A stretch of DNA of 64,000 nucleotides from Macrostomum lignano (GCA_002269645.1 NIVC01000701.1:1-64000), one strand, 5' to 3'; shown: positions 1 to 23,860, counted from the stretch's first letter. The notes: generated by a model not told the origin, from the sequence alone. Numbers and translations: made by a program.

Positions 1-408
1 TGTTTTTTTCTAAATTCATATTGGTTGAATACACTTAGCTCGTAGCTATTCAAAGTAAATAAAATTATCTAGATTGTGTGCTGTGCTCTCTATTATTTTT
101 TCGAATTATTCCAGTCCTACATAGATCTAATTTCGTTTTGATGACTTACCAAAAAAGTTTATACTTTTTAAAACAGATTTATTATTCTCATTATAATTTA
201 GAAATATAGAACTATAATAATTGGCAATTGCAGTATTCAGCTCAGTCTGTTATATACAATTTCTCATTAATTGTATATTTATGCGAAACATGGAAACATT
301 TGAAATAATTTAATATTATTTGAAAATTAAAAAAATTCAATGAGCCCTCGATAAAACACAACTAACAAAGGGATATTTTTTCCAATTATCCTTGTGAAAT
401 TCTCCAAC
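1..408 (+). repeat. Left TIR, unique outer segment
   Basis: AT-rich sequence matching the reverse complement of 14336-14743 (e.g. tgtttttttctaaattcatat vs atatgaatttagaaaaaaca). Confidence 0.95.
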
Positions 409-3400
409 TGTGTTTGTGCTTATCAAGCTTGTGTCGATCTGGAAACAGTTTGCATGCCAAAGCGCAGTAGCACACTCGACTGTGTTTGTGTGCTTATCAA
501 GCTTGTGTCGATCTGGAAACAGTTTGCATGCCAAAGCGCAGTAGCACACTCGACTGTGTTTGTGTGCTTATCAAGCTTGTGTCGATCTGGAAACAGTTTG
601 CATGCCAAAGCGCAGTAGCACACTCGACTGTGTTTGTGTGCTTATCAAGCTTGTGTCGATCTGGAAACAGTTTGCATGCCAAAGCGCAGTAGCACACTCG
701 ACTGTGTTTGTGTGCTTATCAAGCTTGTGTCGATCTGGAAACAGTTTGCATGCCAAAGCGCAGTAGCACACTCGACTGTGTTTGTGTGCTTATCAAGCTT
801 GTGTCGATCTGGAAACAGTTTGCATGCCAAAGCGCAGTAGCACACTCGACTGTGTTTGTGTGCTTATCAAGCTTGTGTCGATCTGGAAACAGTTTGCATG
901 CCAAAGCGCAGTAGCACACTCGACTGTGTTTGTGTGCTTATCAAGCTTGTGTCGATCTGGAAACAGTTTGCATGCCAAAGCGCAGTAGCACACTCGACTG
1001 TGTTTGCGTGCTTATCAAGCTTGTGTCGATCTGGAAACAGTTTGCATGCCAAAGCGCAGTAGCACACTCGACTGTGTTTGTGTGCTTATCAAGCTTGTGT
1101 CGATCTGGAAACAGTTTGCATGCCAAAGCGCAGTAGCACACTCGACTGTGTTTGTGTGCTTATCAAGCTTGTGTCGATCTGGAAACAGTTTGCATGCCAA
1201 AGCGCAGTAGCACACTCGACTGTGTTTGTGTGCTTATCAAGCTTGTGTCGATCTGGAAACAGTTTGCATGCCAAAGCGCAGTAGCACACTCGACTGTGTT
1301 TGTGTGCTTATCAAGCTTGTGTCGATCTGGAAACAGTTTGCATGCCAAAGCGCAGTAGCACACTCGACTGTGTTTGTGTGCTTATCAAGCTTGTGTCGAT
1401 TTGGAAACAGTTTGCATGCCAAAGCGCAGTAGCACACTCGACTGTGTTTGTGTGCTTATCAAGCTTGTGTCGATCTGGAAACAGTTTGCATGCCAAAGCG
1501 CAGTAGCACACTCGACTGTGTTTGTGTGCTTATCAAGCTTGTGTCGATCTGGAAACAGTTTGCATGCCAAAGCGCAGTAGCACACTCGACTGTGTTTGTG
1601 TGCTTATCAAGCTTGTGTCGATCTGGAAACAGTTTGCATACCAAAGCGCAGTAGCACACTCGACTGTGTTTGTGTGCTTATCAAGCTTGTGTCGATCTGG
1701 AAACAGTTTGCATGCCAAAGCGCAGTAGCACACTCGACTGTGTTTGTGTGCTTATCAAGCTTGTGTCGATCTGGAAACAGTTTGCATGCCAAAGCGCAGT
1801 AGCACACTCGACTGTGTTTGTGTGCTTATCAAGCTTGTGTCGATTTGGAAACAGTTTGCATGCCAAAGCGCAGTAGCACACTCGACTGTGTTTGTGTGCT
1901 TATCAAGCTTGTGTCGATCTGGAAACAGTTTGCATGCCAAAGCGCAGTAGCACACTCGACTGTGTTTGTGTGCTTATCAAGCTTGTGTCGATTTGGAAAC
2001 AGTTTGCATGCCAAAGCGCAGTAGCACACTCGACTGTGTTTGTGTGCTTATCAAGCTTGTGTCGATCTGGAAACAGTTTGCATGCCAAAGCGCAGTAGCA
2101 CACTCGACTGTGTTTGCGTGCTTATCAAGCTTGTGTCGATCTGGAAACAGTTTGCATGCCAAAGCGCAGTAGCACACTCGACTGTGTTTGTGTGCTTATC
2201 AAGCTTGTGTCGATCTGGAAACAGTTTGCATGCCAAAGCGCAGTAGCACACTCGACTGTGTTTGTGTGCTTATCAAGCTTGTGTCGATCTGGAAACAGTT
2301 TGCATGCCAAAGCGCAGTAGCACACTCGACTGTGTTTGTGTGCTTATCAAGCTTGTGTCGATCTGGAAACAGTTTGCATGCCAAAGCGCAGTAGCACACT
2401 CGACTGTGTTTGTGTGCTTATCAAGCTTGTGTCGATCTGGAAACAGTTTGCATGCCAAAGCGCAGTAGCACACTCGACTGTGTTTGTGTGCTTATCAAGC
2501 TTGTGTCGATCTGGAAACAGTTTGCATGCCAAAGCGCAGTAGCACACTCGACTGTGTTTGTGTGCTTATCAAGCTTGTGTCGATCTGGAAACAGTTTGCA
2601 TGCCAAAGCGCAGTAGCACACTCGACTGTGTTTGCGTGCTTATCAAGCTTGTGTCGATCTGGAAACAGTTTGCATGCCAAAGCGCAGTAGCACACTCGAC
2701 TGTGTTTGTGTGCTTATCAAGCTTGTGTCGATCTGGAAACAGTTTGCATGCCAAAGCGCAGTAGCACACTCGACTGTGTTTGCGTGCTTATCAAGCTTGT
2801 GTCGATTTGGAAACAGTTTGCATGCCAAAGCGCAGTAGCACACTCGACTGTGTTTGTGTGCTTATCAAGCTTGTGTCGATCTGGAAACAGTTTGCATGCC
2901 AAAGCGCAGTAGCACACTCGACTGTGTTTGTGTGCTTATCAAGCTTGTGTCGATTGGAAACAGTTTGCATGCCAAAGCGCAGTAGCACACTCGACTGTGT
3001 TTGTGTGCTTATCAAGCTTGTGTCGATCTGGAAACAGTTTGCATGCCAAAGCGCAGTAGCACACTCGACTGTGTTTGCGTGCTTATCAAGCTTGTGTCGA
3101 TCTGGAAACAGTTTGCATGCCAAAGCGCAGTAGCACACTCGACTGTGTTTGTGTGCTTATCAAGCTTGTGTCGATCTGGAAACAGTTTGCATGCCAAAGC
3201 GCAGTAGCACACTCGACTGTGTTTGCGTGCTTATCAAGCTTGTGTCGATTTGGAAACAGTTTGCATGCCAAAGCGCAGTAGCACACTCGACTGTGTTTGT
3301 GTGCTTATCAAGCTTGTGTCGATCTGGAAACAGTTTGCATGCCAAAGCGCAGTAGCACACTCGACTGTGTTTGTGTGCTTATCAAGCTTGTGTCGATTTG

Positions 3401-6324
3401 GAAACAGTTTGCATGCCAAAGCGCAGTAGCACACTCGACTGTGTTTGTGTGCTTATCAAGCTTGTGTCGATCTGGAAACAGTTTGCATGCCAAAGCGCAG
3501 TAGCACACTCGACTGTGTTTGTGTGCTTATCAAGCTTGTGTCGATCTGGAAACAGTTTGCATGCCAAAGCGCAGTAGCACACTCGACTGTGTTTGTGTGC
3601 TTATCAAGCTTGTGTCGATCTGGAAACAGTTTGCATGCCAAAGCGCAGTAGCACACTCGACTGTGTTTGTGTGCTTATCAAGCTTGTGTCGATTTGGAAA
3701 CAGTTTGCATGCCAAAGCGCAGTAGCACACTCGACTGTGTTTGTGTGCTTATCAAGCTTGTGTCGATCTGGAAACAGTTTGCATGCCAAAGCGCAGTAGC
3801 ACACTCGACTGTGTTTGTGTGCTTATCAAGCTTGTGTCGATTGGAAACAGTTTGCATGCCAAAGCGCAGTAGCACACTCGACTGTGTTTGTGTGCTTATC
3901 AAGCTTGTGTCGATCTGGAAACAGTTTGCATGCCAAAGCGCAGTAGCACACTCGACTGTGTTTGTGTGCTTATCAAGCTTGTGTCGATCTGGAAACAGTT
4001 TGCATGCCAAAGCGCAGTAGCACACTCGACTGTGTTTGTGTGCTTATCAAGCTTGTGTCGATCTGGAAACAGTTTGCATGCCAAAGCGCAGTAGCACACT
4101 CGACTGTGTTTGTGTGCTTATCAAGCTTGTGTCGATCTGGAAACAGTTTGCATGCCAAAGCGCAGTAGCACACTCGACTGTGTTTGTGTGCTTATCAAGC
4201 TTGTGTCGATCTGGAAACAGTTTGCATGCCAAAGCGCAGTAGCACACTCGACTGTGTTTGTGTGCTTATCAAGCTTGTGTCGATCTGGAAACAGTTTGCA
4301 TGCCAAAGCGCAGTAGCACACTCGACTGTGTTTGTGTGCTTATCAAGCTTGTGTCGATCTGGAAACAGTTTGCATGCCAAAGCGCAGTAGCACACTCGAC
4401 TGTGTTTGTGTGCTTATCAAGCTTGTGTCGATCTGGAAACAGTTTGCATGCCAAAGCGCAGTAGCACACTCGACTGTGTTTGTGTGCTTATCAAGCTTGT
4501 GTCGATCTGGAAACAGTTTGCATGCCAAAGCGCAGTAGCACACTCGACTGTGTTTGTGTGCTTATCAAGCTTGTGTCGATCTGGAAACAGTTTGCATGCC
4601 AAAGCGCAGTAGCACACTCGACTGTGTTTGTGTGCTTATCAAGCTTGTGTCGATCTGGAAACAGTTTGCATGCCAAAGCGCAGTAGCACACTCGACTGTG
4701 TTTGTGTGCTTATCAAGCTTGTGTCGATCTGGAAACAGTTTGCATGCCAAAGCGCAGTAGCACACTCGACTGTGTTTGTGTGCTTATCAAGCTTGTGTCG
4801 ATCTGGAAACAGTTTGCATGCCAAAGCGCAGTAGCACACTCGACTGTGTTTGTGTGCTTATCAAGCTTGTGTCGATCTGGAAACAGTTTGCATGCCAAAG
4901 CGCAGTAGCACACTCGACTGTGTTTGTGTGCTTATCAAGCTTGTGTCGATCTGGAAACAGTTTGCATGCCAAAGCGCAGTAGCACACTCGACTGTGTTTG
5001 TGTGCTTATCAAGCTTGTGTCGATCTGGAAACAGTTTGCATGCCAAAGCGCAGTAGCACACTCGACTGTGTTTGCGTGCTTATCAAGCTTGTGTCGATCT
5101 GGAAACAGTTTGCATGCCAAAGCGCAGTAGCACACTCGACTGTGTTTGTGTGCTTATCAAGCTTGTGTCGATCTGGAAACAGTTTGCATGCCAAAGCGCA
5201 GTAGCACACTCGACTGTGTTTGTGTGCTTATCAAGCTTGTGTCGATCTGGAAACAGTTTGCATGCCAAAGCGCAGTAGCACACTCGACTGTGTTTGTGTG
5301 CTTATCAAGCTTGTGTCGATCTGGAAACAGTTTGCATGCCAAAGCGCAGTAGCACACTCGACTGTGTTTGTGTGCTTATCAAGCTTGTGTCGATCTGGAA
5401 ACAGTTTGCATGCCAAAGCGCAGTAGCACACTCGACTGTGTTTGTGTGCTTATCAAGCTTGTGTCGATCTGGAAACAGTTTGCATGCCAAAGCGCAGTAG
5501 CACACTCGACTGTGTTTGTGTGCTTATCAAGCTTGTGTCGATCTGGAAACAGTTTGCATGCCAAAGCGCAGTAGCACACTCGACTGTGTTTGTGTGCTTA
5601 TCAAGCTTGTGTCGATCTGGAAACAGTTTGCATGCCAAAGCGCAGTAGCACACTCGACTGTGTTTGTGTGCTTATCAAGCTTGTGTCGATCTGGAAACAG
5701 TTTGCATGCCAAAGCGCAGTAGCACACTCGACTGTGTTTGTGTGCTTATCAAGCTTGTGTCGATCTGGAAACAGTTTGCATGCCAAAGCGCAGTAGCACA
5801 CTCGACTGTGTTTGTGTGCTTATCAAGCTTGTGTCGATCTGGAAACAGTTTGCATGCCAAAGCGCAGTAGCACACTCGACTGTGTTTGTGTGCTTATCAA
5901 GCTTGTGTCGATCTGGAAACAGTTTGCATGCCAAAGCGCAGTAGCACACTCGACTGTGTTTGTGTGCTTATCAAGCTTGTGTCGATCTGGAAACAGTTTG
6001 CATGCCAAAGCGCAGTAGCACACTCGACTGTGTTTGTGTGCTTATCAAGCTTGTGTCGATCTGGAAACAGTTTGCATGCCAAAGCGCAGTAGCACACTCG
6101 ACTGTGTTTGTGTGCTTATCAAGCTTGTGTCGATCTGGAAACAGTTTGCATGCCAAAGCGCAGTAGCACACTCGACTGTGTTTGTGTGCTTATCAAGCTT
6201 GTGTCGATCTGGAAACAGTTTGCATGCCAAAGCGCAGTAGCACACTCGACTGTGTTTGTGTGCTTATCAAGCTTGTGTCGATCTGGAAACAGTTTGCATG
6301 CCAAAGCGCAGTAGCACACTCGAC
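409..6324 (+). repeat. 74-bp tandem array, 80 copies (inner part of left TIR)
   Basis: Unit TGTGTTTGTGTGCTTATCAAGCTTGTGTCGATCTGGAAACAGTTTGCATGCCAAAGCGCAGTAGCACACTCGAC. Copies are near-identical; the first lacks 2 nt and two units (at ~2955 and ~3842) lack 1 nt. Confidence 0.98.
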
Positions 6325-6518
6325 TGTGCTTATGTGCTTTATCAATCTTAATATGAACCTTCTCAGAGCAGGCTTCTTTTTAGTGTGTTTTTATCTAAAC
6401 TTCATTCTTTATACTGGTATTACAATTGGTTATTGTCAATTCTATTCCATGTAATTGGTTATTGTCATCACAAATCAGACAGCTTATTACTTTAAAAATT
6501 GTGGCCTTTTCTTTTCAG

Positions 6519-7355
6519 GCCTTTATCAAGTATCCGTTCGTTGTTTTTGAGGGCAACGGCCCTTTGCCTGACAATGCTCCCGAGCTCGATTTGGTTGTCG
6601 GCGTGTTGGTCGATGTTTCAGATGTTCGTGAAGCAGCAAAAGTATTGAATCTTGAATTGCAAAAGGCGCCGATTCGGTGTGTTCGAGGGATGGACGTGAA
6701 GTATCTTTCTGAAGATGGAATTGCCCTGGCACTTTTTAACGGCGTTGCCGTTTTCCGAAAGCGGCTGGTGGAAGGAGAGAACAGGTTAGATAAAACAAAA
6801 CGCTTACAGGCGGTTGAGGCTGGTCGTGTTTGGTTATTAGAGCAAAATTGGAAAATTTCACCTGGCAATTTTTCAGCGGATTATCTCGCCAAGGAGCACA
6901 TTGAAAAGGCCTTAAAGCATTTTGAGCTTGCGGCTTCTATGGCTTCACCTGAAATGGTGCGCAGCGTAACGTTTGGAATCATTTGTGCTCGACAAGCCTT
7001 GCATGATTTTGAAGCATGTCTTAAGGGCATTACTCCGAAAGTTGTTGATCAATGCTACGAGGAAAATGGTTCCTTGTATGCCAGTGCTGCAAATAGCGAC
7101 GTGCAGGATAAGGAAAAGAGGCGCAAGGAGGAGGAGGAGGAAGCAAAGCGCAAGGAGGAGGAAGCAAAGCGCAAGGAGGAGGAAGCGAAGCGCAAGGAGG
7201 AGGCGGGGGCGAAGCGTAGAGTTGCAGGAAAGCAAAGCATGGAGCAAGCAAAGAATTCAAAGGCTAGTTCCAGCACGAAGCGTACTCGTAAATGTATGAA
7301 TATAGTCAGCAAAGGCAGCACAACCCGGTCAAGTAAAAGGATACGACAAGATTGA
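6519..7355 (+). CDS. Second (accessory) gene of the foldback element; unknown protein with C-terminal charged AKRKEEE repeats and basic tail; 5' exon unresolved
   Basis: Strong acceptor ttttcttttcag|GCC at 6518, then 278 open codons of non-repetitive protein-like sequence to TGA at 7355. A phase-0 first exon from ATG 6353 to 6382 is possible. Confidence 0.7.
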   Translation, partial: AFIKYPFVVFEGNGPLPDNAPELDLVVGVLVDVSDVREAAKVLNLELQKAPIRCVRGMDVKYLSEDGIALALFNGVAVFRKRLVEGENRLDKTKRLQAVEAGRVWLLEQNWKISPGNFSADYLAKEHIEKALKHFELAASMASPEMVRSVTFGIICARQALHDFEACLKGITPKVVDQCYEENGSLYASAANSDVQDKEKRRKEEEEEAKRKEEEAKRKEEEAKRKEEAGAKRRVAGKQSMEQAKNSKASSSTKRTRKCMNIVSKGSTTRSSKRIRQD

Positions 7356-8960: not shown

Positions 8961-11900
8961 CTAATTGTTATTTGTTCTCGTAGCTCCGCACCCGCAAAAT
9001 CCAAGAGTGTAAATCAAAAGACTTGGTCTTCCCCGGCTCCTTTGGCGATTTTCCTTAGAAAAGTGAAGCTGTCCTAGTTCGCTTGATGCAGCATCATCAT
9101 AAATGTAACTAGAATCGCCTCGATTGAGACGCCCGAAGAAATGTCCTGTCACGGCTGTCGTACAGCAGAGATTGTAGCTGAAAAAAATTGGCAGGTACAA
9201 TGAGTGTAGGGCACACAAAACATGTTGAAAGAAGTACATGCATGTACTTCAAGATATGTTTCAATAGTAAGCCCCTTCAAATGTTCATAGGAGTACATCA
9301 GAGTTTGGTGGTGCGCACGATGAACACTTACACTACACAGTACTACTAATACTGGATAAAAACTTCAACAGTCCAAAGTCATCACACTTTCAAGAGCCAA
9401 AAATTCCTTACTGAATATTTCGCTCCTCTGGAAATGGATGCACGACGTCGTGTGGTGGAAGAATCTCCCGTCCGTTAGCTGCATCGGGGATGCCGATCAC
9501 CAAAACCGGTGGCGGGAAATTGACAAACCGAGGGTGGTGTACGTAAAGCGACGCATAATCGCAAGTACTGCATTCGACACATCTGTCACCCGAGGTAAAA
9601 AATTGCAGGAGAAAGTCCTCTGGAGACATAAAAGTCACATGGCTACTAAATGACGATAGACGTTCCGGCACGGGAAGAACGAGTTGATAAAAACGCCTCT
9701 CCTCGTTAGACGAGCAGTAAGGGCAAACAAAGCGTTGAGCGATTGCGACGATGTCTCCAAGCACCCAAGTACAGACATCCAGTGCTCCTTGGTACAGATT
9801 GATATCAATCTCTTTGGAAGTACTGGATCTACGCCTTGTGATGGCCCCATGTCGATGTAGTTCTAGACATCGCAATAGCAGCCTAGCTCGAGCGAAATGG
9901 GCGCTTTCTTGAGTAAATTATTGTACAGCTGCATGCAAAAAGTCCACCAACGGAGAAAAATTATCCGGAAGTTGCTGAACTGCTTGGCGAAAATGCTGAT
10001 CATCTCTCATTGCGAATGTGAGGGCCGTCAATAAGTGATCCACAGTGCATGCGTTGTACACATGAACTGTAAGTACTTCATCATTAAATGGAACCTTTCG
10101 AGAAGTTGAATAATTTTTCATTAGAGAAAAGTTACTTGATACCCGTAGAGATGGAGCACATACCGAAGCTCGTGCATTTAAGGTGGGACATGTTGAATAA
10201 CGAACTTTCCGCCTTTTGTTAGTGACGACAGAAAAATGAGAACGGTCATCTGTTATATTCTCTTCCTCCTCCATGGGAGTGAATGGACTTTCAGGTTTTC
10301 GCTGTACAGGCGGCCTTGAACTGTCGTAAGGCGGTCTTGACCTGTCAGGCGGCCGTGAACTGCCGCTGCCAGGCGGCCGTGAACTACCGCTGCCAGGCGG
10401 CCGTGAACTGGCGCTAACAGGCGGCCCTAAACTGCTGCTGCCCGGCGGCCCTGAAACGTCACTGACTGGCGGCCTTGAATTGCCGCTGCCAGGCGGCCGT
10501 GAACTGGCGCTAACAGGCGGCCGTGAACTGTCGTCAGGCGGCCCTGAACTGCCGCTGCCCGGCGGCCCTGAAACGCCACTGACTGGCGGCCTTGAACTGC
10601 CGCTGCCAGGCGGCCGTGAACTTCCGCTAACAGGCGGCATTGAACTGTCGGCTGGAGGCATTGAACTGTCGTCAGGCGGCACTGAACTGTCGGCTGGAGG
10701 CATTGAACTGTCGTCAGGCGGCACTGAACTGTCGGCTGGAGGCATTGAACTGTCGTCAGGCGGCATTGAACTGCCGACAGGCGGCATTGTACTGCCGGCA
10801 GGCGGCACTGAACTGCCGGCAGGCGGCATTGTACTGTCGTCAGGCGGCCCTGAACTGCCGCTGCCCGGCGGCCCTGAAACGCCACTGACTGGCGGCCTTG
10901 AACTGCCGCTGCCAGGCGGCCGTGAACTGTCGTCAGATGGCCCCGAACTGTCATTTATCTCCGAACTGCCTTCTGATTCATCAAGACATTGATAATCTCG
11001 CTGTTGCATAAAAACTCCGAGAGGACGCAGAAATTGATTGTAGGTTCCAGGAAGAACACTGTGCAGTTTCCTGATGAAAACGTGTGTGCTTAAGCAATGC
11101 CCCTCGAGTAGATGGTTTGTTACTATTCCGACACAGCGCTCTGTTCCTCCTTCTTGAAAGCAATGTGTCGAGCGATCGACAACGGAAAAACTCTCCTCGC
11201 GAGCATATCTGCACGGCTCTGACATGATGCTCGTAAAAAGTGGCAAATACGGCAACATAACGTCGAAAAGCTTGCGTGACAATTCAGGGCAGTAAAATGG
11301 ATTAGGCATAGAGCGAAAGTTTTCTACTGCGGAAGCAGAAAATTTATTCTCCAGGTCCTGATGCACTTCCTGGAACATCTGCCAAAACGGTGATGACCTT
11401 TTGATTGTTTCGTCTGGCTTTGCGTACAGCCATTCCTCTCGAGGAATAAATTCTCCGCTTTCATTCAGCTCGCCGGCGATGGTAGCATCCAAATACACTT
11501 TTGGAGATACTGCTTCACCTTCAATCCGTAGTTCTTCTATTGGAGCACTCATTTCCTCCAATGTCGGTGCAAGAAGAACAGCAAAAAAGGCTGTAACAAT
11601 GTTCTTAGTCTCGCTGAGACTGGTTGAATGCACTAGAGAACGAAATGCGTCTTTCCAAAAGAGCGAAATTCGATTGTCGCGACAAGCCTTAACAACGGAC
11701 CAGCTGCAAAACTCGTGAACGATATGGCTTCTACCAAGTCCGACGAGTGGAAATTTACGCAGCTCCCGTACTGAAAATGAACGACGAAGAATGGAACAGC
11801 ATAGTCTCAGAAATGGGAGAATGTCCATTCCATGAAGACCGTAGATAAGAGCAGACAGACTTGGAATGTTGAAGTCTGTGACTGCCTGCCGAACTACGAG

Positions 11901-13162
11901 GCCTGTGACAGATTTCCTTACCGAAGTTAGGAACGTGTCGACAGCAAATTTCAGCGTTGATTTCGTCTGCGAGGATGTGACTACAAGAAGAATCGGTACT
12001 GGCGCTTCTCCATTAACAGGGTGTCGCAGAGCTAGTATGTGGAGATAAGCTCCATGACCATCCACAAGAGGAGCTCCTGTAGAGTCCAGACCAATTTCAA
12101 TCGGCAAACTGCGGCGGTGTAGTATTTTGAGCAGAGTGATTGCCTGGTCGAAATACAGAACGGCAAAGCGCACATGGCCAAGTCCTGGCTCAACATTAAT
12201 ATGTCTCACAAAGGGGGGATCTAACTGTTCTCCTTGTACGATTATGTCCAAAATAGGATCGCAAAACAGCTTTTCTCTAAGTCGTTCTTGAGATGCTGCG
12301 GTCCTCAGAACGCTCGAAGACGGAACTTCAGGAGTTAGTCCCCCGGCAGCTAGTCTTGCTGAAACTAGATAGGCATTACTATCATCTACTCTTTTAGCCA
12401 AGTCTTTTCGCCGTTCACCTCTGAGAGGGCGTGGTTCTATAACATGCGGTACAATTGGTTGAAGTGGTTTCAGAATCCAAACAAGCCGATTCTCTTTTGA
12501 CTTTAGTTTGAACGAAGTCTTGCATGTTACAACACGGCAGTATAAATCTGCAGAAACCTCGCCAGTACTTATTGTAATTCTACTTCGCTGCATGCATAAA
12601 CAACAAGACAACATCGAGGAAAAGTTAGGCAGGACTTTATCCTGCCAGTTAGGGCACAACTGACCATTGTCGCCCAGCAAATCTGATTGCACTTTTACGG
12701 TGAAAATAGGCACATTTTCTCTACAATTGGATGTACAAGGCGTCGCCCTAAAACTCAACATTCGAGTAATTGCTATGAAAGAAAATGCACACATAAAACA
12801 GTACAAAATAGTAAGAGCTTACTCTTCAGGATCTTCATCTTCATCCGCTTCACACTCCTGATTGTCAGGGCCGACAGTGTGCAACTGAAATGCGTTTCTT
12901 CGAAACTGGTCGTATAGCCAACGTCTGTTAGAAAAAGTGTCCTCAAAACCAAGCAAACGGCACATTCTGGACCAAACAGTTTCAGCTGTTCTCGGGCCGG
13001 GTAGGGGCCCCTCAAGTTCTGATCGCAAAATGCTACCCGACGAAAATAAACGCCCAATCATTTCGGACGAAACAGTCGTCTTATCTGCAATGTGGAACGT
13101 GCAAATAAAAAAATCTAATAAAGTAAAAATAAAAACTATATGACTACATGTCGCGTACTCAT
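8961..13162 (-). CDS. Mutator/NOF-type DDE transposase fused to a USP (C19)-like cysteine protease; exons 13162-13159, 13084-12823, 12747-9412, 9177-8961; in-frame TAA at 9920-9918
   Basis: GT-AG introns are phase-compatible and exons total 3819 nt (1272 aa + stop). Transposase motifs: LDSTG (D 12086-12084), VTDF (D 11876-11874), GRSH (H 11726-11724), GTERC (E 11141-11139). Protease motifs: YNAC (C 10049-10047), CPYC and CVECSTC zinc ligands, PPPVLVI, TGHF (H 9143-9141), YIYDD, SLLIY. Confidence 0.82.
10310..10950 (-). repeat. In-frame GC-rich 21/24-bp minisatellite encoding a Pro/Ser/Gly linker (PPGSGSSR, PPDDSSM) between transposase and protease domains
   Basis: Repeats of ggcggcc(c/g)tgaactg and ggcattgaactgtcg; frame maintained throughout. 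Confidence 0.9.
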
Positions 13163-13353: not shown

Positions 13354-14335
13354 TTGATAAGCACACAAACACAGTCGAGTGTGCTACTGCGCTTTGGCAT
13401 GCAAACTGTTTCCAGATCGACACAAGCTTGATAAGCACACAAACACAGTCGAGTGTGCTACTGCGCTTTGGCATACAAACTGTTTCCAGATCGACACAAG
13501 CTTGATAAGCACACAAACACAGTCGAGTGTGCTACTGCGCTTTGGCATGCAAACTGTTTCCAGATCGACACAAGCTTGATAAGCACACAAACACAGTCGA
13601 GTGTGCTACTGCGCTTTGGCATGCAAACTGTTTCCAGATCGACACAAGCTTGATAAGCACACAAACACAGTCGAGTGTGCTACTGCGCTTTGGCATGCAA
13701 ACTGTTTCCAGATCGACACAAGCTTGATAAGCACACAAACACAGTCGAGTGTGCTACTGCGCTTTGGCATGCAAACTGTTTCCAGATCGACACAAGCTTG
13801 ATAAGCACACAAACACAGTCGAGTGTGCTACTGCGCTTTGGCATGCAAACTGTTTCCAGATCGACACAAGCTTGATAAGCACACAAACACAGTCGAGTGT
13901 GCTACTGCGCTTTGGCATGCAAACTGTTTCCAGATCGACACAAGCTTGATAAGCACACAAACACAGTCGAGTGTGCTACTGCGCTTTGGCATGCAAACTG
14001 TTTCCAAATCGACACAAGCTTGATAAGCACACAAACACAGTCGAGTGTGCTACTGCGCTTTGGCATGCAAACTGTTTCCAGATCGACACAAGCTTGATAA
14101 GCACACAAACACAGTCGAGTGTGCTACTGCGCTTTGGCATGCAAACTGTTTCCAGATCGACACAAGCTTGATAAGCACACAAACACAGTCAAGTGTGCTA
14201 CTGCGCTTTGGCATGCAAACTGTTTCCAGATCGACACAAGCTTGATAAGCACACAAACACAGTCGAGTGTGCTACTGCGCTTTGGCATGCAAACTGTTTC
14301 CAGATCGACACAAGCTTGATAAGCACACAAACACA
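13354..14335 (-). repeat. 74-bp tandem array, 13 full copies + 20-bp partial (inner part of right TIR)
   Basis: Exact reverse complement of the left-arm unit; 13374-14335 = 13 x 74. Confidence 0.98.
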
Positions 14336-14743
14336 GTTGGAGAATTTCAACAAGGATAATTGGAAAAAATATCCCTTTGTTAGTTGTGTTTTATCGAGGG
14401 CTCATTGAATTTTTTTATTTTTCAAATAATATTAAATTATTTCAAATGTTTCCATGTTTCGCATAAATATACAATTAATGAGAAATTGTATATAACAGAC
14501 TGAGCTGAATACTGCAATTGCCAATTATTATAGTTCTATATTTCTAAATTATAATGAGAATAATAAATCTGTTTTTAAAAAGTATAAACTTTTTTGGTAA
14601 GTCATCAAAACGAAATTAGATCTATGTAGGACTGGAATAATTCGAAAAAATAATAGAGAGCACAGCACACAATCTAGATAATTTTATTTACTTTGAATAG
14701 CTACGAGCTAAGTGTATTCAACAATATGAATTTAGAAAAAACA
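14336..14743 (-). repeat. Right TIR, unique outer segment (may extend further right)
   Basis: Reverse complement of 1-408. Confidence 0.95.
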
Positions 14744-16482
14744 AACAATTATATAATATCTTTGTATGCCATCTTTTGTGACTTGTCTGCAGCTGATTAG
14801 GAAAATATTGCTAGCATATTACTAAGGCAGAATATTTTAGCACTCTATAAAATTTTGGAGTCTTTGGTACCATGCCACGATACTAAATGAGTAGCTACAA
14901 AGTGAATCACTTTTAACTTTCAAAAATCCAAAAGTCAATCTGAATATTCTCTTTAAAGTGTACACTAGACTAAAGAGGCTTATACTAGACTAGACTAGAC
15001 TAGACTAAAGATTATTATCTTAATTGTGTCGTGTGTTAATGTGTTACAAAGTGGATTGAGTGTAACACAAAATATGAATCATAATACTGCTAGCTAGACC
15101 TAGAAACACGTATCAAGCAATGTTTGTTACTCGATATTGTACAGTCAATAACTAAGTGGCCAATTAGCCTACTGTTAATGTCACAGCCCATAGCTCAAAT
15201 GAAAGCACGTGCAGTAATTCTAAAGTTACGTTATCATTCAATTGCAAGTTAAATTTTAGCACTTCTTCAATTATCCTTTAATAAGAGCAATAATATATAA
15301 CTACTTGATTTATTAGTTTTATAAAACAAATTTTTAACTGAGCTAAAGATAAAAACATTAAAGTACTTTCTGTTTCTTTATTAAATTATAGCTATGTTGT
15401 TATAAATAAAAACAAAAAATTGTAACACCGGGATACTTCTATGGTTCAAACAAAAAACTTTATATCCTTGCAAAAGAAGCTGTCGCAAATGTGCCAGTTT
15501 CTCAATTATACTCTTTGGACATCTGGCAATTGAAAAAGCCAGCTGTCGCAATGTACAGCTCTGAAAAAGTCGAGTGTCGCAAGCGAAATAAAAAATTCGA
15601 CATTTTTTTAAGTTTTAAAGTCCTCTGCTGACCGAACCATTGAACTTCCAGTTGTGAGAATTTGTCCTTGGTTACAGGACTTGATGGACTATAAGAATCA
15701 GCAACTGTCGCAAGAATTGCCCAAAGCTTAAAATTCCTAAGCCCAAAAAACAAGCCATCCGCACGCTATCCGCACGTAACTAATTTTTAACGCCTCCCCA
15801 CAGACAAGCCAAGTACATGGAATGCTTTGAACCTTCTGTTGCATAAATAAAGTGTCTAAATCTTTGCAAAATATCCAGATTTATAGCTGTCGCAAACATT
15901 TAAATTTTTTATGAGGATGGCATGCGGCTAGATTTACGGGAGTCCTCACTTTGCACAATTTTTCACTTTCTTCTTGGCTATTGCCATCCAATAATCAAAA
16001 TTTTAAAGCACTAATATCTCTCTAGTTTAGGAGACAAAAAGTTATACTTTACAAATTGGTTCTGGTTCTAGAACCAGAACAAGCAATATGAAGAGCCTCA
16101 TAGAAGATACGAGAAAACTGATCGGGTAGCTTTCATTCGTTGAACCCTCGCACACCGCTCCCCCCACTTCATTCCTCAACTCAAGTCTGACGCGGCGTAG
16201 CTATAAAGTTGCGTCACTCGCAAAGATTGAGAGACTTCACCGGCCTGCACTTCTCAAAGGGTGCCACCGAATTCGTCAACTCTGTATTTATAGGCCACCC
16301 TCAATGGGTATGTGGAAATATAATAGTTCATGTTGTTCTCAATCTCATTCCTCTACAGTTTTATCTAATGTGCCTAAGCCTAAGTGCTTTCAGGTGCGGA
16401 TCCAGAAAATTTTGAACGGGGGGCACAGACTTCTAAAGGTACACATATATATTGTACAATATAAAGCTACCCGATTGTATAT

Positions 16483-20753: not shown

Positions 20754-23054
20754 ATGTCTAGTAAATCAGAATCTGAGCACTCTCTTTCTACTAATTACTC
20801 AGCCTACTCTTGTCAGGCGATTTCTTCTCCCTCAAATAGTTTTTCTACAAGTAATAGGAGTTCAATTTCAAGCGAAGCCGGTGTAACGCACTCGCACAGC
20901 TGTCCTGACGCTGTGGAAACTTTTATTGGTGAAAACAATGCTGTGCCTGTGCTTGAGGAGAGTTCAGATAGCTTAGCGAATTTGGCTTCCATCTCAGATC
21001 CCAGTGTGCAGGCGGCTCTGATTTTTCAGTGGGCAATTACTTCCGGAGTTTCAGAGGCTGCTCTTGATAGACTCCTGAAGCTACTTTCTATTTTTAGTAG
21101 AGATTCTCTAGCTCTTCCAAATAGCGTCAAGTTGCTCAAATCATTGATTCAAGATACTTGCCCTCTTGATGATAGTGACGTGTCTGAATTTGGCTTTTGC
21201 CCAGAATGCAAAAGCCAGTGTCAGGTTCATTCCCCAAAGTCAAAGGTTGCTGTGACACAGCTCAATATTGTTCCACAGCTGCGGACTATCTTAAGCAGCC
21301 ACACTTCAACTATTCTGCAGTATGAGCAAGAATTGCAAAAGGATAAAAACACAGACGTTTTGAATTCCAAAATAGTTAAAGAACAAGGCTTAAGCCTATC
21401 TTCTGGCAAGTCGCTTCACTTGCATCTTCTAATCTCAGCTGATGGCGCCAATTTTTTTGAATCTGTTCAGAGTAGCTTTTGGCCATTTCAGGCTCAACTT
21501 CTAAACCTTCCTGTTTACATCCGTCAACGCTTTGCAAATTTAATTCTAATTGCTCTTGTTTCATCGAAGGCAGTCCCGCATTTCCAGTCTTTTCTGTCTG
21601 AAATTATGAACAATTTGCCAAAACAGTTTATATTCTCGGAATACACCGTTCATGTCCATTACACACTCTTTGTTTGTGACTTGCCCGCTCTTGCTAAGCT
21701 CTTCTGCATTCACCAGTACAATGGTGCGTTTAGCTGTCCTAGGTGCTTGCACCCAGGTGAGAGCTTTAAAGTATCCGAGAAAGGTAAAAACTGGATCTTC
21801 CGCTATGGTGAAGGCTACTTGTTTCCTTTGAGAAACCCATCTTCCCATCTTGAACACTGTCGGCTCGCACAAATTCGAAATCGGCCTGTTTTTGGCGTAA
21901 AGATGCGCAGTTGCTTGTTAGACTATGTTCCGTTTCCCAGCTGCAATCCTATTGACAGTTTACACTGCTTTTTCGAAGGCCACACCAAGTATCTACTAGA
22001 AGAGCTGTCATTACCTGCAAACAGGCGCGAGTTGTATTTTTGCTCAGCTAATTGCATGGATTTCATATCTAATTGTATTCGTCAATCTATAACTCCTTCT
22101 AGCATCACAATCAACACAAATTTTAAAGGCTTTTCAGATTGGAAAGCAAAGCATTTTAAAAACTTTGCGCTATACTTTCTTCTTCCTACGTTTTTGCAGA
22201 GAATTTCGCATTTTCCATTGAAACTGCTGTTAACTAATTTAGTTCTTATTTATCACATGTTGTATAGCCCCCAATCAAATAAGACTGATATCGAAAAGCT
22301 ATGCAAAGCTTTTATCTCCAATGCTCAGCAAATATTCGGACCGAAAGTACTCCGCCTTAATTTCCACCTGCTTTTGCATATGGCTGAACAGTACGAATTG
22401 TACGGACCTGTATTTAATTATTCTATGTTCGCATTTGAGAGCTCCATTGGCATGTTCAAAAAGTTCTTATGCGGAACTGTGTCATTTGGCCCACAGCTTG
22501 TTCGCAAGTTTTTGTTTCAAAAGTTGCTACATCACTACTTTTCTTGTGTTAAGGACTCTATTGTAGTGGATGCAGTTAACTCTATATCTTTAGAGCCATC
22601 CAGGCCACATGGTATTCTTCGAAACTCACTTGCTTATTTTAATGGACATTTTTTCTCGACAAGCTCAGCTTGTGCGTCGAAAAATTCTAACCATCTTTGC
22701 CAATTGAAGTCCGGCGAAATCTGCACTATTGCAGAGTTCCTCGAGCCTAATACTATTCGAGTGCAAATTTTGGATCCCATTGGTTCGCTGTTTGATTTTG
22801 TTTTACGAGTACCAGCAGCAACTTTCCCCATCGATTTACTTAATTGGAAAGCATTGCTGGAATCCATGTTCAAAAAGTCTTCGACATTCAATTTTGTATT
22901 GATATCCCTGTCTAATGCGCCCAGATCGGCCAGACGCGAACGTATAGTTAATTTTTCAGAGGTCGATCGACCCTGCATCGCTGTTCCAGTAGAATCGTTC
23001 AGCAAAGACTGTTATTGCGCTGTGCCATTGTTCAAAGAGTTTGAACATGATTAA
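20754..23054 (+). CDS. EnSpm/CACTA-type DDE transposase (TnpD/Tnp2-like), 766 aa
   Basis: Motifs ISADG (D), SFWP, LFVCDLPA (D), YNGAFSCPRCLHPG, PIDSLHC, WKAKHF, NFHLLLH, GPVFNYSMFAFES (E). AATAAA at 23125-23130. Confidence 0.92.
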   Translation: MSSKSESEHSLSTNYSAYSCQAISSPSNSFSTSNRSSISSEAGVTHSHSCPDAVETFIGENNAVPVLEESSDSLANLASISDPSVQAALIFQWAITSGVSEAALDRLLKLLSIFSRDSLALPNSVKLLKSLIQDTCPLDDSDVSEFGFCPECKSQCQVHSPKSKVAVTQLNIVPQLRTILSSHTSTILQYEQELQKDKNTDVLNSKIVKEQGLSLSSGKSLHLHLLISADGANFFESVQSSFWPFQAQLLNLPVYIRQRFANLILIALVSSKAVPHFQSFLSEIMNNLPKQFIFSEYTVHVHYTLFVCDLPALAKLFCIHQYNGAFSCPRCLHPGESFKVSEKGKNWIFRYGEGYLFPLRNPSSHLEHCRLAQIRNRPVFGVKMRSCLLDYVPFPSCNPIDSLHCFFEGHTKYLLEELSLPANRRELYFCSANCMDFISNCIRQSITPSSITINTNFKGFSDWKAKHFKNFALYFLLPTFLQRISHFPLKLLLTNLVLIYHMLYSPQSNKTDIEKLCKAFISNAQQIFGPKVLRLNFHLLLHMAEQYELYGPVFNYSMFAFESSIGMFKKFLCGTVSFGPQLVRKFLFQKLLHHYFSCVKDSIVVDAVNSISLEPSRPHGILRNSLAYFNGHFFSTSSACASKNSNHLCQLKSGEICTIAEFLEPNTIRVQILDPIGSLFDFVLRVPAATFPIDLLNWKALLESMFKKSSTFNFVLISLSNAPRSARRERIVNFSEVDRPCIAVPVESFSKDCYCAVPLFKEFEHD

Positions 23055-23384
23055 AAAGGTACGAGTATGTGTCCGTACCTTAGATCCGATTATTTTATTA
23101 TTAATGCTGCAAAGTCTGGCAGAAAATAAAATTATGCTCCATGACCAAGATAAAACCATCAGGGAATCAGAATAACTTTCCAGATGCCCAACTTCCTCCC
23201 TCTCAGACTCCCACCGTTACCTCTCTTTGTCCGATCTCTCCATATTCAAAATCTCCAAGTTTCTGTGCGCAAATAATTGACTAATGCAGCATTAACTTCG
23301 TTTCGTAAAGGATTAGTCGGCCCTTGCCCTTAATGCGTACCGAATTCGGCTAATTCTATTTATTGACTGTTCAGTAAAATTTAC

Positions 23385-23860
23385 TGTTTTATTTTTTCTT
23401 ACAGTACCTTGAAATGCGTCAAATTCTGTCTATTCTGTATCTTAAAGCTCTCTGAGCTGTTTTATTTTTTCTTACAGTACCTTGAAATGCGTCAAATTCT
23501 GTCTATTCTGTATCTTAAAGCTCTCTGAGCTGTTTTATTTTTCTTACAGTACCTTGAAATGCGTCAAATTCTGTCTATTCTGTATTTTAAAGCTCTCTGA
23601 GCTGTTTTATTTTTTCTTACAGTACCTTGAAATGCGTCAAATTCTGTCTATTCTGTATTTTAAAGCTCTCTGAGCTGTTTTATTTTTTCTTACAGTACCT
23701 TGAAATGCGTCAAATTCTGTCTATTCTGTATTTTAAAGCTCTCTGAGCTGTCTTATTTTTTCTTACAGTACCTTGAAATGCGTCAAATTCTGTCCATTCT
23801 GTATTTTAAAGCTCTCTGAGACTGAGCTGTCTTATTTTTTCTTACAGTACTTTGAAATGA
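23385..23860 (+). repeat. ~73-bp tandem repeat (~6.5 copies) in the 3' region of the CACTA element
   Basis: ACAGTAC recurs at 23401, 23474, 23546, 23619, 23692, 23765, 23844. Confidence 0.92.

What the first reader, a model, noticed from the sequence alone, without database searches (positions are those of the whole stretch)
8961..13162. Foldback/Mutator transposase fused to a complete USP-type deubiquitinase-like domain
Seen: four ORF fragments in the track join through canonical, phase-compatible introns (74, 75 and 234 nt) into one 1272-aa protein. The N-terminal half has NOF/Rehavkus-like MULE catalytic motifs (LDSTG, VTDF, GRSH, GTERC). After a repeat linker come USP-like boxes in the correct order: Cys box (YNACTVDHLLTAL), zinc fingers (CPYC...CVECSTC), PPPVLVI, and His/Asp boxes (YNLCCTTAVTGHF...YIYDD...SLLIY). 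Established: some Mutator-like and other DNA transposons carry Ulp1/C48 SUMO proteases, and some Helitrons carry OTU domains. I do not recall a well-characterised MULE transposase with a C19/USP fold. Inference: the element may deubiquitinate its own transposase or chromatin (e.g. H2A/H2B ubiquitin) to counter host silencing.
Basis: partly seen in the sequence, partly recalled or inferred. Interest (0 to 1): 0.88.

Follow-up and report, generated by a model that had tools for sequence, protein, structure and literature searches.

The report
Transposase fused to USP-like protease
This is a broken copy of a large foldback-type "jumping gene", probably from the flatworm Macrostomum, whose cut-and-paste enzyme carries at its tail a domain with the fold and catalytic residues of a ubiquitin-removing protease. 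The combination is conserved in several animal phyla, is unnamed in databases, and was not described in the papers I could search.

Summary
The gene is real. On the minus strand, 13162-8961 encodes a 1272-codon protein. It aligns end to end with a Macrostomum lignano protein (PAA68264.1): 36% identity over the N-terminal 678 aa and 30% over the C-terminal 397 aa. Two corrections apply. An in-frame TAA at 9920-9918, not an intron, separates two of the four ORF fragments, so this copy is a pseudogene. The 4-nt first exon and its 74-nt intron are unsupported.

The gene sits in a foldback element with inverted 74-bp tandem arrays (407-6349 and 13354-14337) and a conserved second gene (6426-7355). 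The M. lignano relative has identical 2.16-kb inverted ends and a 9-bp target duplication.

The N-terminal half is a WRKY-like zinc finger plus an RNase H-like DDE core, most like Rehavkus-type MULEs.

The C-terminal domain is USP-like:
- A family profile hits only USPs at the top of the PDB list (USP1, E 2.9e-5).
- An AlphaFold model of a relative matches USP catalytic domains (Foldseek E 4e-9).
- Cys989, His1213 and Asp1228 are retained.

More distant relatives carry Ulp1/C48 or canonical UCH domains at the C-terminus instead. I rate it a new variant of a known theme. Enzyme activity and substrate are untested.

The parts
1..406 (+). Outer, non-tandem part of the left inverted terminus. It is cut off by the start of the window.
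   Evidence: It is the reverse complement of 14338-~14745. The M. lignano relative has a 1.4-kb outer unique TIR part in the same position.
407..6349 (+). Left subterminal array: 80 copies of a 74-bp repeat.
   Evidence: TRF: period 74, 80.4 copies, 99% matches. It is inverted relative to 13354-14337 at 99-100%.
6426..7355 (+). Second element gene (ORF2, 309 aa, Glu/Lys-rich C-terminal repeat), tail-to-tail with the transposase gene. Its function is unknown.
   Evidence: ORF, with no Pfam hit. tblastn gives 41% identity, E 1.7e-35, to the second gene at the equivalent place of the M. lignano element (L002 15966-15478).
8961..9177 (-). Last exon: USP-like His/Asp box (His1213 = 9143-9141, Asp1228 = 9098-9096), the terminal strand SLLIY, and the TAG stop.
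   Evidence: It aligns to the C-terminus of PAA68264.1 and to the GHY...W.YDG box of the family and of USP46/USP12.
9178..9411 (-). 234-nt intron (GTAAGG...TTTCAG).
   Evidence: The M. lignano gene has an intron at the same protein position, splitting the codon just before Y-x-L of the His box.
9412..12747 (-). Main exon: WRKY-like finger, DDE core, repeat linker, and USP-like Cys box, helical region and zinc-ribbon fingers.
9918..9920 (-). In-frame TAA (codon 1032) inside the USP-like domain. This nonsense mutation makes the copy a pseudogene.
   Evidence: Both flanks are in one frame, and homolog alignments run across the stop.
9412..10100 (-). USP-like domain, first part: Cys box VYNACTVD (Cys989 = 10049-10047; Asp992 is invariant in the family), helical 'thumb', and zinc-ribbon cysteines C1097/C1100 (9725-9714) and C1145/C1148 (9581-9570), then PPPVLVI.
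   Evidence: Family alignments, profile versus PDB, and family profile versus the window.
10307..10952 (-). Coding minisatellite (21/24-nt units) that makes a Pro/Ser/Gly-rich linker of about 210 aa between the transposase and the protease domain.
   Evidence: TRF and the translation. The M. lignano relative has a different 63-nt coding repeat at the same place. Rehavkus is described as having a 'minisatellite in Cterm' (PMC6446971).
11019..12209 (-). RNase H-like DDE catalytic core with a long helical insertion. Candidate catalytic residues are D310 (12086-12084), D380 (11876-11874) and E625 (11141-11139). H430 (11726-11724) belongs to the G-R-S-H variant of the C-x-x-H motif.
   Evidence: These are invariant or near-invariant columns in 37- and 42-member alignments. 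The AF2 model has pLDDT 84.7. Foldseek finds RAG1, Hermes, ISCth4, and PIWI/RNase H folds, and a full-length match to bracovirus protein O92526 at E 3e-10.
12465..12599 (-). N-terminal four-stranded zinc-finger module (CxxC...C..C), WRKY/GCM1-like. It is the presumed DNA-binding domain.
   Evidence: AF2 strands 50-94 of the N-core model. Foldseek matches WRKY18 and WRKY1 DNA-binding domains with probability 1.0 and target-normalised TM 0.58-0.64.
12748..12822 (-). 75-nt intron (GTAAGC...TTTTAG).
   Evidence: The M. lignano gene has an intron at about the same protein position, aa 89/90.
12823..13084 (-). N-terminal exon (conserved RRWLYDxFRR motif). Met10 at 13061-13059 is a possible true start.
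13085..13162 (-). Proposed 4-nt first exon (13162-13159) plus 74-nt intron. Unsupported.
   Evidence: The splice signals are canonical, but the M. lignano homolog has a contiguous first exon.
13354..14337 (-). Right subterminal array: 13 copies of the same 74-bp repeat, inverted.
14338..14745 (-). Outer non-tandem part of the right inverted terminus. The true end lies further right, tentatively near 15943.
   Evidence: It is the reverse complement of 1-406. The tentative end rests only on a weak 50-nt, 72% match to the terminal part of the M. lignano TIR (E 0.27).

Best explanation
The region is the coding centre of a large (>15 kb) foldback-type cut-and-paste DNA transposon of the MULE superfamily, closest in architecture to Rehavkus elements. 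It is almost certainly in a Macrostomum flatworm genome.

The element has long inverted termini, each made of an outer unique part and an inner array of 74-bp repeats. It has two genes.

Gene 1 encodes a multidomain transposase with these parts in order:
- a short conserved N-terminus;
- a WRKY-like zinc finger, which presumably binds the terminal or subterminal repeats;
- an RNase H-like DDE core (D310, D380, E625), which would excise the element and insert it with a 9-bp target duplication;
- a disordered Pro/Ser-rich linker encoded by a minisatellite;
- a C-terminal USP-fold (peptidase C19-like) cysteine protease domain with Cys989, His1213 and Asp1228 and a four-cysteine zinc ribbon.

Shown: the gene model, the element architecture, the conservation of the fusion across phyla, the USP fold, and the retained triad.

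Inferred: the domain is an active isopeptidase that the transposase brings to the transposition site. There it would remove ubiquitin or a ubiquitin-like modifier (possibly SUMO) from the transposase itself, from chromatin, or from repair or silencing factors. This would protect the transposase from turnover or keep the element's chromatin permissive. More distant family members carry a Ulp1/SENP (C48) or a canonical UCH domain at the C-terminal end instead. This argues that deconjugation of ubiquitin-like modifiers is the selected function.

This particular copy is dead or crippled by a TAA at codon 1032 inside the protease domain.
For: Gene model and the in-frame stop.

End-to-end homology with M. 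lignano PAA68264.1, and conserved intron positions.

Foldback architecture in the window. The same architecture in the M. lignano locus, with 100%-identical 2164-bp TIRs, 89-bp arrays, a 9-bp TSD (CAATCTTCA) and a homologous second gene.

Family size and the fusion:
- 759 homologs at E<=1e-3.
- At least 35 of the 150 listed hits carry the C-terminal domain after a complete core.
- P0006, P0013 and P0017 carry the transposase core and the whole C-terminal domain within one predicted protein on short Logan/JGI contigs.

USP identity:
- Profile versus PDB: the top 15 hits are all USP-family deubiquitinases (14 eukaryotic USP chains plus bacterial TssM), USP1 at 2.9e-5, with Cys, His and Asp boxes aligned.
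- AF2 model pLDDT 80.6, pTM 0.81.
- Foldseek: all 50 listed top hits are USP catalytic domains, E 4e-9.
- The window C-terminus scores 59.6 bits against a profile that excludes it.
- Family members P0117 and P0089 pass Pfam's UCH gathering score, and P0039 has a sub-threshold DUSP hit.

C48 alternatives in more distant members.

MULE/Rehavkus affinity:
- Weak Pfam MULE hits and PHD in 12 of 42 members.
- WRKY-like finger and RAG1/Hermes/ISCth4-like core.
- Full-length structural match to a bracovirus protein.
- Published descriptions of Rehavkus: PHD, C-terminal minisatellite, 9-bp TSD, and TIRs plus subterminal tandem repeats (PMC6446971; PMC12581902).
Against: - No biochemical or expression evidence exists. 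Activity, substrate (ubiquitin, SUMO or another modifier) and any role in transposition are all inferred.
- The window protein itself gets no Pfam hit and no PDB hit by single-sequence search.
- TM-scores to USPs are moderate (0.45-0.5).
- The window copy has Ala instead of the near-invariant Thr before the catalytic Cys. It also has Tyr in place of the family's Trp and a shorter loop in the His box. It has a stop codon, so it may already be decaying.
- MULE membership rests on sub-threshold Pfam scores (E about 0.002) in relatives and on fold and architecture. No Repbase Rehavkus or NOF sequence was available to compare.
- The left end and the TSD of the window copy lie outside the window.
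Confidence: 0.75

Rival explanations
1. The domain is a USP-fold protease specific for SUMO or another ubiquitin-like modifier rather than ubiquitin, as USPL1 is. Its role would be the same as that of the Ulp1/C48 domains of other MULEs. This is a variant of the main explanation, not exclusive of it.
For: More distant members of the same transposase family carry bona fide Peptidase_C48 domains at the C-terminal end (7 of 42, best E 4.6e-19). Ulp1 domains are the classical MULE accessory (PMC2836005). The Cys-box neighbourhood (NTCxxDN, preceded by a P-x-W-G-G hairpin) differs from canonical USPs.
Against: The nearest structural and profile matches are ubiquitin-specific USPs (USP12, USP46, USP1). 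Two family members have canonical UCH domains, and one has a sub-threshold DUSP hit. No specificity determinant could be evaluated.
Confidence: 0.25
2. The domain is a catalytically dead pseudo-USP that serves only as a ubiquitin/UBL-binding or protein-interaction module. It might, for example, recruit the transposase to modified chromatin.
For: The sequence is very divergent, below Pfam thresholds in nearly all members. Inactive USP-fold proteins exist (established knowledge: USP39, PAN2).
Against: Cys is invariant in all 17 aligned members. His and Asp are present in every member with a complete domain: the window copy, P0006, P0013, P0017, P0118/P0157 and P0153. Dead USP folds usually lose these residues.
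Confidence: 0.12
3. The protease acts in cis. It would process the transposase polyprotein, for example by cleaving in or near the repeat linker, rather than deconjugating host substrates.
For: The domain is tethered by a long disordered linker. A conserved P-x-W-G-G motif lies just upstream of the Cys box in most members, and Gly-Gly is the P2-P1 signature of USP substrates.
Against: In the AF2 model that motif is part of a structured beta-hairpin of the domain. It is not conserved in the window copy (PFND), and only one Gly remains in the M. lignano protein (PFNG). No precedent is known among the Ulp1- or OTU-bearing transposases.
Confidence: 0.07
4. The C-terminal part is a captured host USP gene fragment or a gene-model chimera with no function in the element (Pack-MULE-like capture).
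For: MULEs are known for capturing host fragments (PMC8277862 abstract). Most database members are automatic predictions.
Against: The domain is in the same position and in frame in flatworm, scallop, sea cucumber and environmental sequences. It is present together with the core in single predicted proteins (P0006, P0013, P0017). The intron position is conserved between two diverged Macrostomum families, and the catalytic residues are conserved.
Confidence: 0.03
5. It is a domesticated host gene derived from a transposase, not part of a mobile element.
For: Transposase-derived host genes are common. The proteins are annotated only as 'uncharacterized protein LOC...' in several animals.
Against: The gene lies between long inverted termini in both loci. 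In M. lignano these termini are 100% identical and flanked by a 9-bp TSD. M. lignano has several paralogous copies. This copy carries a nonsense mutation.
Confidence: 0.03

Closest known systems
Rehavkus elements (MULE superfamily; Repbase; described in PMC6446971 and PMC12581902)
   Same: [quoted passage not shown] A single very long transposase ORF. A minisatellite in the C-terminal part. A 9-bp TSD, seen here in the M. lignano relative. PHD fingers in 12 of 42 family members. Hosts are metazoan invertebrates.
   Different: The window protein itself has no detectable PHD finger. The published descriptions that I could read mention no protease domain. Known hosts were arthropods and annelids, whereas these are flatworm, mollusc, echinoderm and fish. 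No Repbase sequence was available, so the sequence relationship is untested.
Ulp1/C48-bearing MULEs (KI-MULEs/Kaonashi of plants; Mutator elements of hydra and lancelet) and Ginger1 transposases with OTU or Ulp1 domains (PMC2836005)
   Same: A DDE transposase with a C-terminal cysteine protease of the ubiquitin/SUMO-deconjugating kind. More distant members of the very family found here carry C48 domains at the C-terminal end.
   Different: The fold here is USP (C19: fingers, palm and thumb with a zinc ribbon), not C48 or OTU.
Other TE-C19 associations: IS5-like transposase plus Peptidase C19 in Trichomonas vaginalis XP_001314237.1 (noted in PMC2836005); UCH domains stably carried by Helentron-type Helitron-like elements (PMC11417382)
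   Same: A USP/UCH-type domain carried by a mobile element.
   Different: The transposition enzymes are unrelated (IS5/Harbinger-like DDE; RepHel rolling-circle). There, the domains are recognisable by standard models. Here, the domain is mostly below Pfam thresholds.
Cellular USP catalytic domains, nearest USP12/USP46/USP1 (PDB 5k16, 5cvn, 5l8h, 7ay0)
   Same: The fold. The order of the Cys box (N-T-C), the zinc ribbon (CxxC...CxxC), the 'PPxxLxxxL'-like strand, the His box (G-H-Y/F) and W/Y-x-x-Y/F-D. The Cys-His-Asp triad.
   Different: About 11-15% identity. There is an extra N-terminal beta-hairpin with a P-x-W-G-G motif, D instead of N three residues after the Cys, and a short His-box loop in the Macrostomum clade. 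The domain is fused to a transposase. Activity is unknown.
Drosophila Foldback/FB-NOF and other foldback elements (Galileo, Tetris, Tm1, FARE)
   Same: Long inverted termini built from tandem repeats around a transposase gene.
   Different: Foldback architecture has arisen with several transposase superfamilies (PMC3169594). Similarity of this protein to NOF was not tested.

Membership tests
Peptidase C19 / USP fold | Cys box with the catalytic Cys in an N-T/S-C context | tested here: met
   Window has Y-N-A-C989. The Cys is invariant in 17 aligned members and aligns to GNTC of USP1, USP46 and USP12. The window has Ala where the family has a near-invariant Thr.
Peptidase C19 / USP fold | His box (G-H-Y/F) followed by W..[FY]-D, which supplies the catalytic His and Asp/Asn | tested here: met
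   Window has T-G-H1213-F-F ... Y-I-Y-D1228-D. The family has sGHY...W.YDG. It aligns to GHY...W.lFDD of USP46 and USP12.
Peptidase C19 / USP fold | Fingers-palm-thumb three-dimensional fold | tested here: met
   AF2 model of relative P0006 (pLDDT 80.6, pTM 0.81). Foldseek versus PDB: all 50 listed top hits are USP catalytic domains, E down to 4.4e-9, probability 1.0, TM 0.45-0.5. The model is of a relative, not of the window sequence.
Peptidase C19 / USP fold | Scores above the curated threshold of Pfam UCH (PF00443) | tested here: not met
   No hit for the window protein even at E<=10. Close relatives are sub-threshold (P0006 16.2 bits, P0021 16.7 bits, versus a cut-off of 23.9). Only two family members with a more canonical domain pass (P0117 37.2 bits, P0089 32.0 bits).
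Peptidase C19 / USP fold | Ubiquitin (or UBL) isopeptidase activity | not testable with these tools
   Needs probe or substrate assays.
MULE (Mutator-like) transposase superfamily | DDE RNase H-like core recognised by the MULE model (PF10551) | tested here: inconclusive
   No hit in the window protein. E 0.002-0.0035 (18-19 bits, cut-off 27.6) in P0006 and P0017, covering the stretch between the first two acidic residues. Only 2 of 42 members hit at E<0.01. The fold search gives RAG1, Hermes and the IS256-family ISCth4 only weakly.
MULE (Mutator-like) transposase superfamily | 9-11-bp target site duplication | tested here: met
   9-bp TSD (CAATCTTCA) flanks the M. lignano relative. This is not testable for the window copy, whose left end is outside the window.
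MULE (Mutator-like) transposase superfamily | N-terminal WRKY/FLYWCH-type zinc-finger DNA-binding domain | tested here: met
   The four-stranded Cys-rich module of the AF2 model matches WRKY18 and WRKY1 domains (probability 1.0, target-normalised TM 0.58-0.64). That this finger type is typical of MULEs is from my own knowledge.
MULE (Mutator-like) transposase superfamily | C/D-x-x-H motif after the second catalytic Asp | tested here: inconclusive
   The His is invariant (H430). Most family members have C-x-x-H, but the window's clade has G-R-S-H.
Rehavkus | Inverted termini made of a TIR plus subterminal tandem repeats | tested here: met
   Definition from PMC12581902.
Rehavkus | PHD finger in the transposase | tested here: not met
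   No PHD hit in the window protein or in the M. lignano protein. PHD is present in 12 of 42 family members, including ones that carry the same USP-like domain (P0021, P0029, P0065).
Rehavkus | Minisatellite in the C-terminal part, before the 3' terminus | tested here: met
   Coding 21/24-nt minisatellite at 10307-10952, and a 63-nt one in the M. lignano relative. Definition from PMC6446971.
Rehavkus | Sequence similarity to Repbase Rehavkus consensus transposases | not testable with these tools
   Repbase is not available here.
Foldback/NOF | Protein similarity to Drosophila NOF | not tested
   No NOF sequence was at hand. Only the foldback architecture is shared.

The most novel reading that the evidence does not exclude
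A widespread, so far unnamed clade of metazoan Rehavkus-like MULE transposases always carries a ubiquitin-like-modifier protease and has swapped between C48 (Ulp1/SENP), canonical USP and this divergent USP-fold domain. On this reading, deconjugation of ubiquitin or SUMO at the transposition site is an integral, selected step of the element's life cycle. An example would be erasing SUMO- or ubiquitin-dependent, small-RNA-guided silencing marks, or stabilising the transposase. It would not be an accidental passenger, and the divergent domain could be a new USP-fold specificity class.
Probability: 0.2. Interest if true: 0.8.

Novelty: new variant of a known kind. Interest (0 to 1): 0.55.

Why it matters
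Transposons that carry Ulp1 or OTU proteases have been known for twenty years, but nobody has shown what the protease does for the element. This family offers a natural experiment. It has the same transposase backbone with three interchangeable deconjugating domains: C48, canonical UCH and a divergent USP fold. It also has apparently young copies in Macrostomum lignano, a laboratory flatworm with transgenesis tools; the relative's inverted ends are 100% identical and it has an intact TSD. If the domain is active, it is a compact, highly divergent USP whose specificity is worth determining, and a candidate anti-silencing or self-stabilising device.

There is also a practical use. The family members whose source records I looked up are named only 'hypothetical' or 'uncharacterized protein'. 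A family profile would improve TE and gene annotation in flatworms, molluscs, echinoderms and fish.

Tried and rejected
- Pfam on the window protein halves found nothing relevant. A single-sequence PDB search found only a chance P2X hit.
- Word-indexed homolog searches were nearly blind to this family. The C-terminus gave 0 hits, the N-core gave 1 hit, and the C-terminal profile gave 1 hit. Only the exhaustive profile search opened the family up.
The window's own C-terminal domain therefore could not be modelled, and a relative was used instead.
- My first iterative HMM build drifted into the transposase core. I redid it on tails only.
- hhalign of the family profile against the canonical UCH domain of P0089 aligned only the His box (probability 0.7%). 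It neither links nor separates the two USP types.
- A profile of full-length proteins against the PDB was dominated by the C48-bearing members and gave no transposase hit.
- DNA comparison of the M. lignano element with the window gave no significant similarity. The two are different families, and the tentative right end near 15943 is not established.
- I could not confirm from the held library that bracovirus protein O92526, the best structural match of the core, is the 'Phantom' MULE of Marquez and Pritham 2010. That paper is not held.
- Trans-spliced-leader donation of the start codon was considered and rejected. It relied on a leader sequence ending in ATG that I recalled from memory, and that ATG would be out of frame with exon 2.
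- Alternative genetic code (TAA read as Gln) was considered and not pursued. Stop codons are otherwise frequent in all frames, and the M. lignano homolog needs no reassignment.

Full report
**1. What is in the sequence**

On the minus strand, four ORF fragments lie between 13442 and 8961. They assemble from exons 13162-13159, 13084-12823, 12747-9412 and 9177-8961. The introns are 74, 75 and 234 nt, all GT..AG. The result is a 3819-nt frame of 1272 codons plus a TAG stop.

- The fragments 9918-12806 and 9408-9875 are in the same frame. They are separated by an in-frame TAA (9920-9918, codon 1032), not by an intron.
- The 4-nt first exon with its 74-nt intron is only a formal possibility. Met10 (13061-13059) is an alternative start.

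**2. Is the gene model real?**

Yes. An exhaustive profile search with the N-terminal core found 759 homologs. The closest named one is Macrostomum lignano PAA68264.1 (1106 aa).
- The spliced window protein aligns with it from residue 1 (36% identity over 678 aa, E 7e-124).
- After a non-homologous repeat linker, it aligns again to the very last residues (30% over 397 aa, E 1e-28).
- The alignment runs across the TAA and across the last splice junction.
- The M. lignano gene has exactly two introns, at the protein positions of the window's 75-nt and 234-nt introns. It has none at the proposed first one.

So the 75-nt and 234-nt introns are supported, the first is not, and the TAA is a nonsense mutation. 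This copy is a pseudogene.

**3. The surrounding element**

The gene sits between inverted arrays of a 74-bp repeat: 407-6349 (80 copies) and 13354-14337 (13 copies), 99-100% complementary. The inverted repeat continues outward as unique sequence. Positions 1-406 are the reverse complement of 14338-~14745, and the left arm runs off the window.

Between the left array and the gene lies a 309-aa ORF on the other strand (6426-7355).

The M. lignano locus (L002) has the same plan:
- 2164-bp inverted ends that are 100% identical, each with an outer unique part and an inner 89-bp array;
- the transposase gene;
- a second gene, tail-to-tail, that is homologous to the window's ORF2 (41% identity, E 1.7e-35);
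- a perfect 9-bp target duplication, CAATCTTCA.

This is the architecture published for Rehavkus. [quoted passage not shown] They also list a 9-bp TSD, a PHD finger and a minisatellite in the C-terminal part (PMC6446971). The window has such a coding minisatellite at 10307-10952.

The window is probably from M. lignano itself. A neighbouring 766-aa ORF occurs on contigs whose longest has the same length (606,861 bp) as an M. lignano contig.

**4. The N-terminal half**

Pfam gives nothing for the window protein. In relatives it gives only sub-threshold MULE hits (E about 0.002), plus PHD fingers in 12 of 42 members.

An AlphaFold model of the window's own core, built with a 37-sequence alignment, has pLDDT 84.7. 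It shows:
- a four-stranded zinc-finger module that matches WRKY DNA-binding domains (probability 1.0);
- an RNase H-like domain with weak matches to RAG1, Hermes and the IS256-family ISCth4 transposase;
- a full-length match (E 3e-10) to an uncharacterized bracovirus protein.

The invariant or near-invariant acidic residues correspond to D310, D380 and E625. H430 belongs to a G-R-S-H variant of the C-x-x-H motif.

I therefore file it as a MULE-superfamily, Rehavkus-like transposase with moderate confidence. Similarity to Drosophila NOF was not tested.

**5. The C-terminal domain**

On its own it has no Pfam, PDB or word-index hit. However, the same domain follows the transposase core in at least 35 of the 150 listed family members.

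It is complete in P0006, P0013 and P0017. These are single predicted proteins on short environmental contigs that contain both the transposase core and the whole C-terminal domain. It is also complete in scallop XP_069109981.1 and in the M. lignano protein.

Conserved features, in order, are:
- P-x-W-G-G;
- N-T-C-x-x-D-N-L-L;
- a helical region with A-K..W-L;
- Y-G-S-E;
- C-S-x3-C-P;
- C-x-G-x-R;
- P-P-x-[VIL]3;
- Y-x-L...G-H-[YF]...W-x-x-Y-D-G;
- a terminal hydrophobic strand.

Evidence that this is a USP fold:
- A 17-sequence profile searched against the PDB returns only USP-family deubiquitinases in its 15 best hits: USP1 2.9e-5, USP46 7.9e-4, USP12 1.2e-3, then USP21, USP5, bacterial TssM and USP36. 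NTC aligns on GNTC, and GHY..W.lYD aligns on GHY..W.lFDD.
- An AlphaFold model of the P0006 domain has pLDDT 80.6 and pTM 0.81. All 50 listed top Foldseek hits are USP catalytic domains (E 4.4e-9, probability 1.0, TM 0.45-0.5).
- A profile that excludes the window sequence scores the window's spliced C-terminus at 59.6 bits (E 1.4e-20), aligned over positions 11-276 of 279.

The window retains Cys989, His1213, Asp1228 and the four zinc-ribbon cysteines. It has Ala for the near-invariant Thr before the Cys, Tyr in place of the family's Trp in the His box, and the stop codon at 1032.

**6. Wider family**

Among 42 long family members, 7 have bona fide Peptidase_C48 (Ulp1/SENP) domains at the C-terminal end, best E 4.6e-19. 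This is confirmed against SENP1 and SENP2 structures. Two have canonical UCH domains above Pfam's threshold (P0117 37.2 bits, P0089 32.0 bits). One has a sub-threshold DUSP hit after the divergent USP-like domain (P0039).

Members come from flatworm, scallop, mussel, sea cucumber, a loach and unlabelled assemblies. All that carry a name are called 'hypothetical' or 'uncharacterized'.

**7. Mechanism**

Shown:
- a two-gene foldback MULE-like element;
- a transposase with a tethered USP-fold domain;
- conservation of the Cys-His-Asp triad across phyla;
- interchange with other ubiquitin-like-modifier proteases in more distant relatives.

Inferred:
- The WRKY-like finger binds the terminal or subterminal repeats.
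- The DDE core performs cut-and-paste with a 9-bp duplication.
- The protease removes ubiquitin or a ubiquitin-like modifier from the transposase, chromatin, or repair or silencing factors at the site.

The rivals are ranked in the Rival explanations section: SUMO-type specificity, pseudo-enzyme, cis-processing, captured fragment, and domesticated gene.

**8. Comparison with what is known, and novelty**

- Ulp1 in Mutator elements, and OTU or Ulp1 in Ginger1 and Helitrons, are established.
- A C19 domain next to an IS5-like transposase in Trichomonas was noted in 2010 (PMC2836005).
- UCH domains were recently reported in Helentron-type elements (PMC11417382).
- Searches of the held literature for Rehavkus, Foldback or MULE together with ubiquitin hydrolase, UCH or USP found no description of a USP domain in these transposases.
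- Repbase Reports, where Rehavkus is described, could not be consulted.

I rate it a new variant of a known kind. It is interesting to transposon and deubiquitinase specialists, but it fits an existing theme, and this particular copy is inactive.

Noticed in passing
window 6426-7355 (+): A second conserved gene inside the element: 309 aa with a Glu/Lys-rich repeat tail and no Pfam hit. It is homologous (41% identity, E 1.7e-35) to the second gene of the M. lignano element. Its function is unknown.
   Followed up: partly
window 20754-23054 (+): Intact 766-aa ORF of an EnSpm/CACTA-type transposase (DUF1258 E 1.2e-14; DUF4218 and Transposase_21 weak). The exact protein is on 8 public contigs. A 73-bp tandem array follows it at 23384-23859.
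   Followed up: partly
window 28725-29663 (-): Intronless 312-aa ADP/ATP carrier gene (three Mito_carr repeats, E 1.7e-63). It is the only ordinary host gene seen in the window.
   Followed up: partly
window 36000-64000: The second half of the window is almost entirely micro- and minisatellite arrays with extreme strand asymmetry. Examples are an 18-mer GAGAGGGAGACACTGAGA over 51970-58376, a 20-mer over 43180-44412, and (ACTG)n at 46159-46841. GC skew reaches 0.58.
   Followed up: no
family alignment; window 10100-10062: A conserved P-x-W-G-G motif lies about 12 residues before the catalytic Cys in most family members. It is PFNG in the M. lignano protein and PFND in the window. In the AF2 model it starts an extra beta-hairpin that is not part of canonical USPs.
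   Followed up: partly
family members P0068, P0072, P0098, P0121, P0143 versus P0117, P0089 versus the window clade: The same transposase backbone carries a C48 (Ulp1/SENP) domain, a canonical UCH domain, or the divergent USP-like domain at the C-terminal end. One member (P0039) adds a sub-threshold DUSP hit.
   Followed up: partly
P0030 (MES9880808.1): One family member is deposited as a protein of a bacterial MAG ('Sedimenticola sp.', 7.6-kb contig). It is most likely animal-host DNA mis-binned into the MAG.
   Followed up: no
window 407-6349 versus 13354-14337: The two inverted arrays differ greatly in length (80 versus 13 copies) while remaining 99-100% identical. This is consistent with the array expansion reported for Rehavkus-borne satellites in Tribolium (PMC12581902).
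   Followed up: no
L001 (Logan SRR28417640 contig, 2180 bp): The only word-index homolog (P0001) is split into two ORFs (118-744 and 792-2036) that together match the window's N-terminal half. The contig ends before any C-terminal domain.
   Followed up: partly
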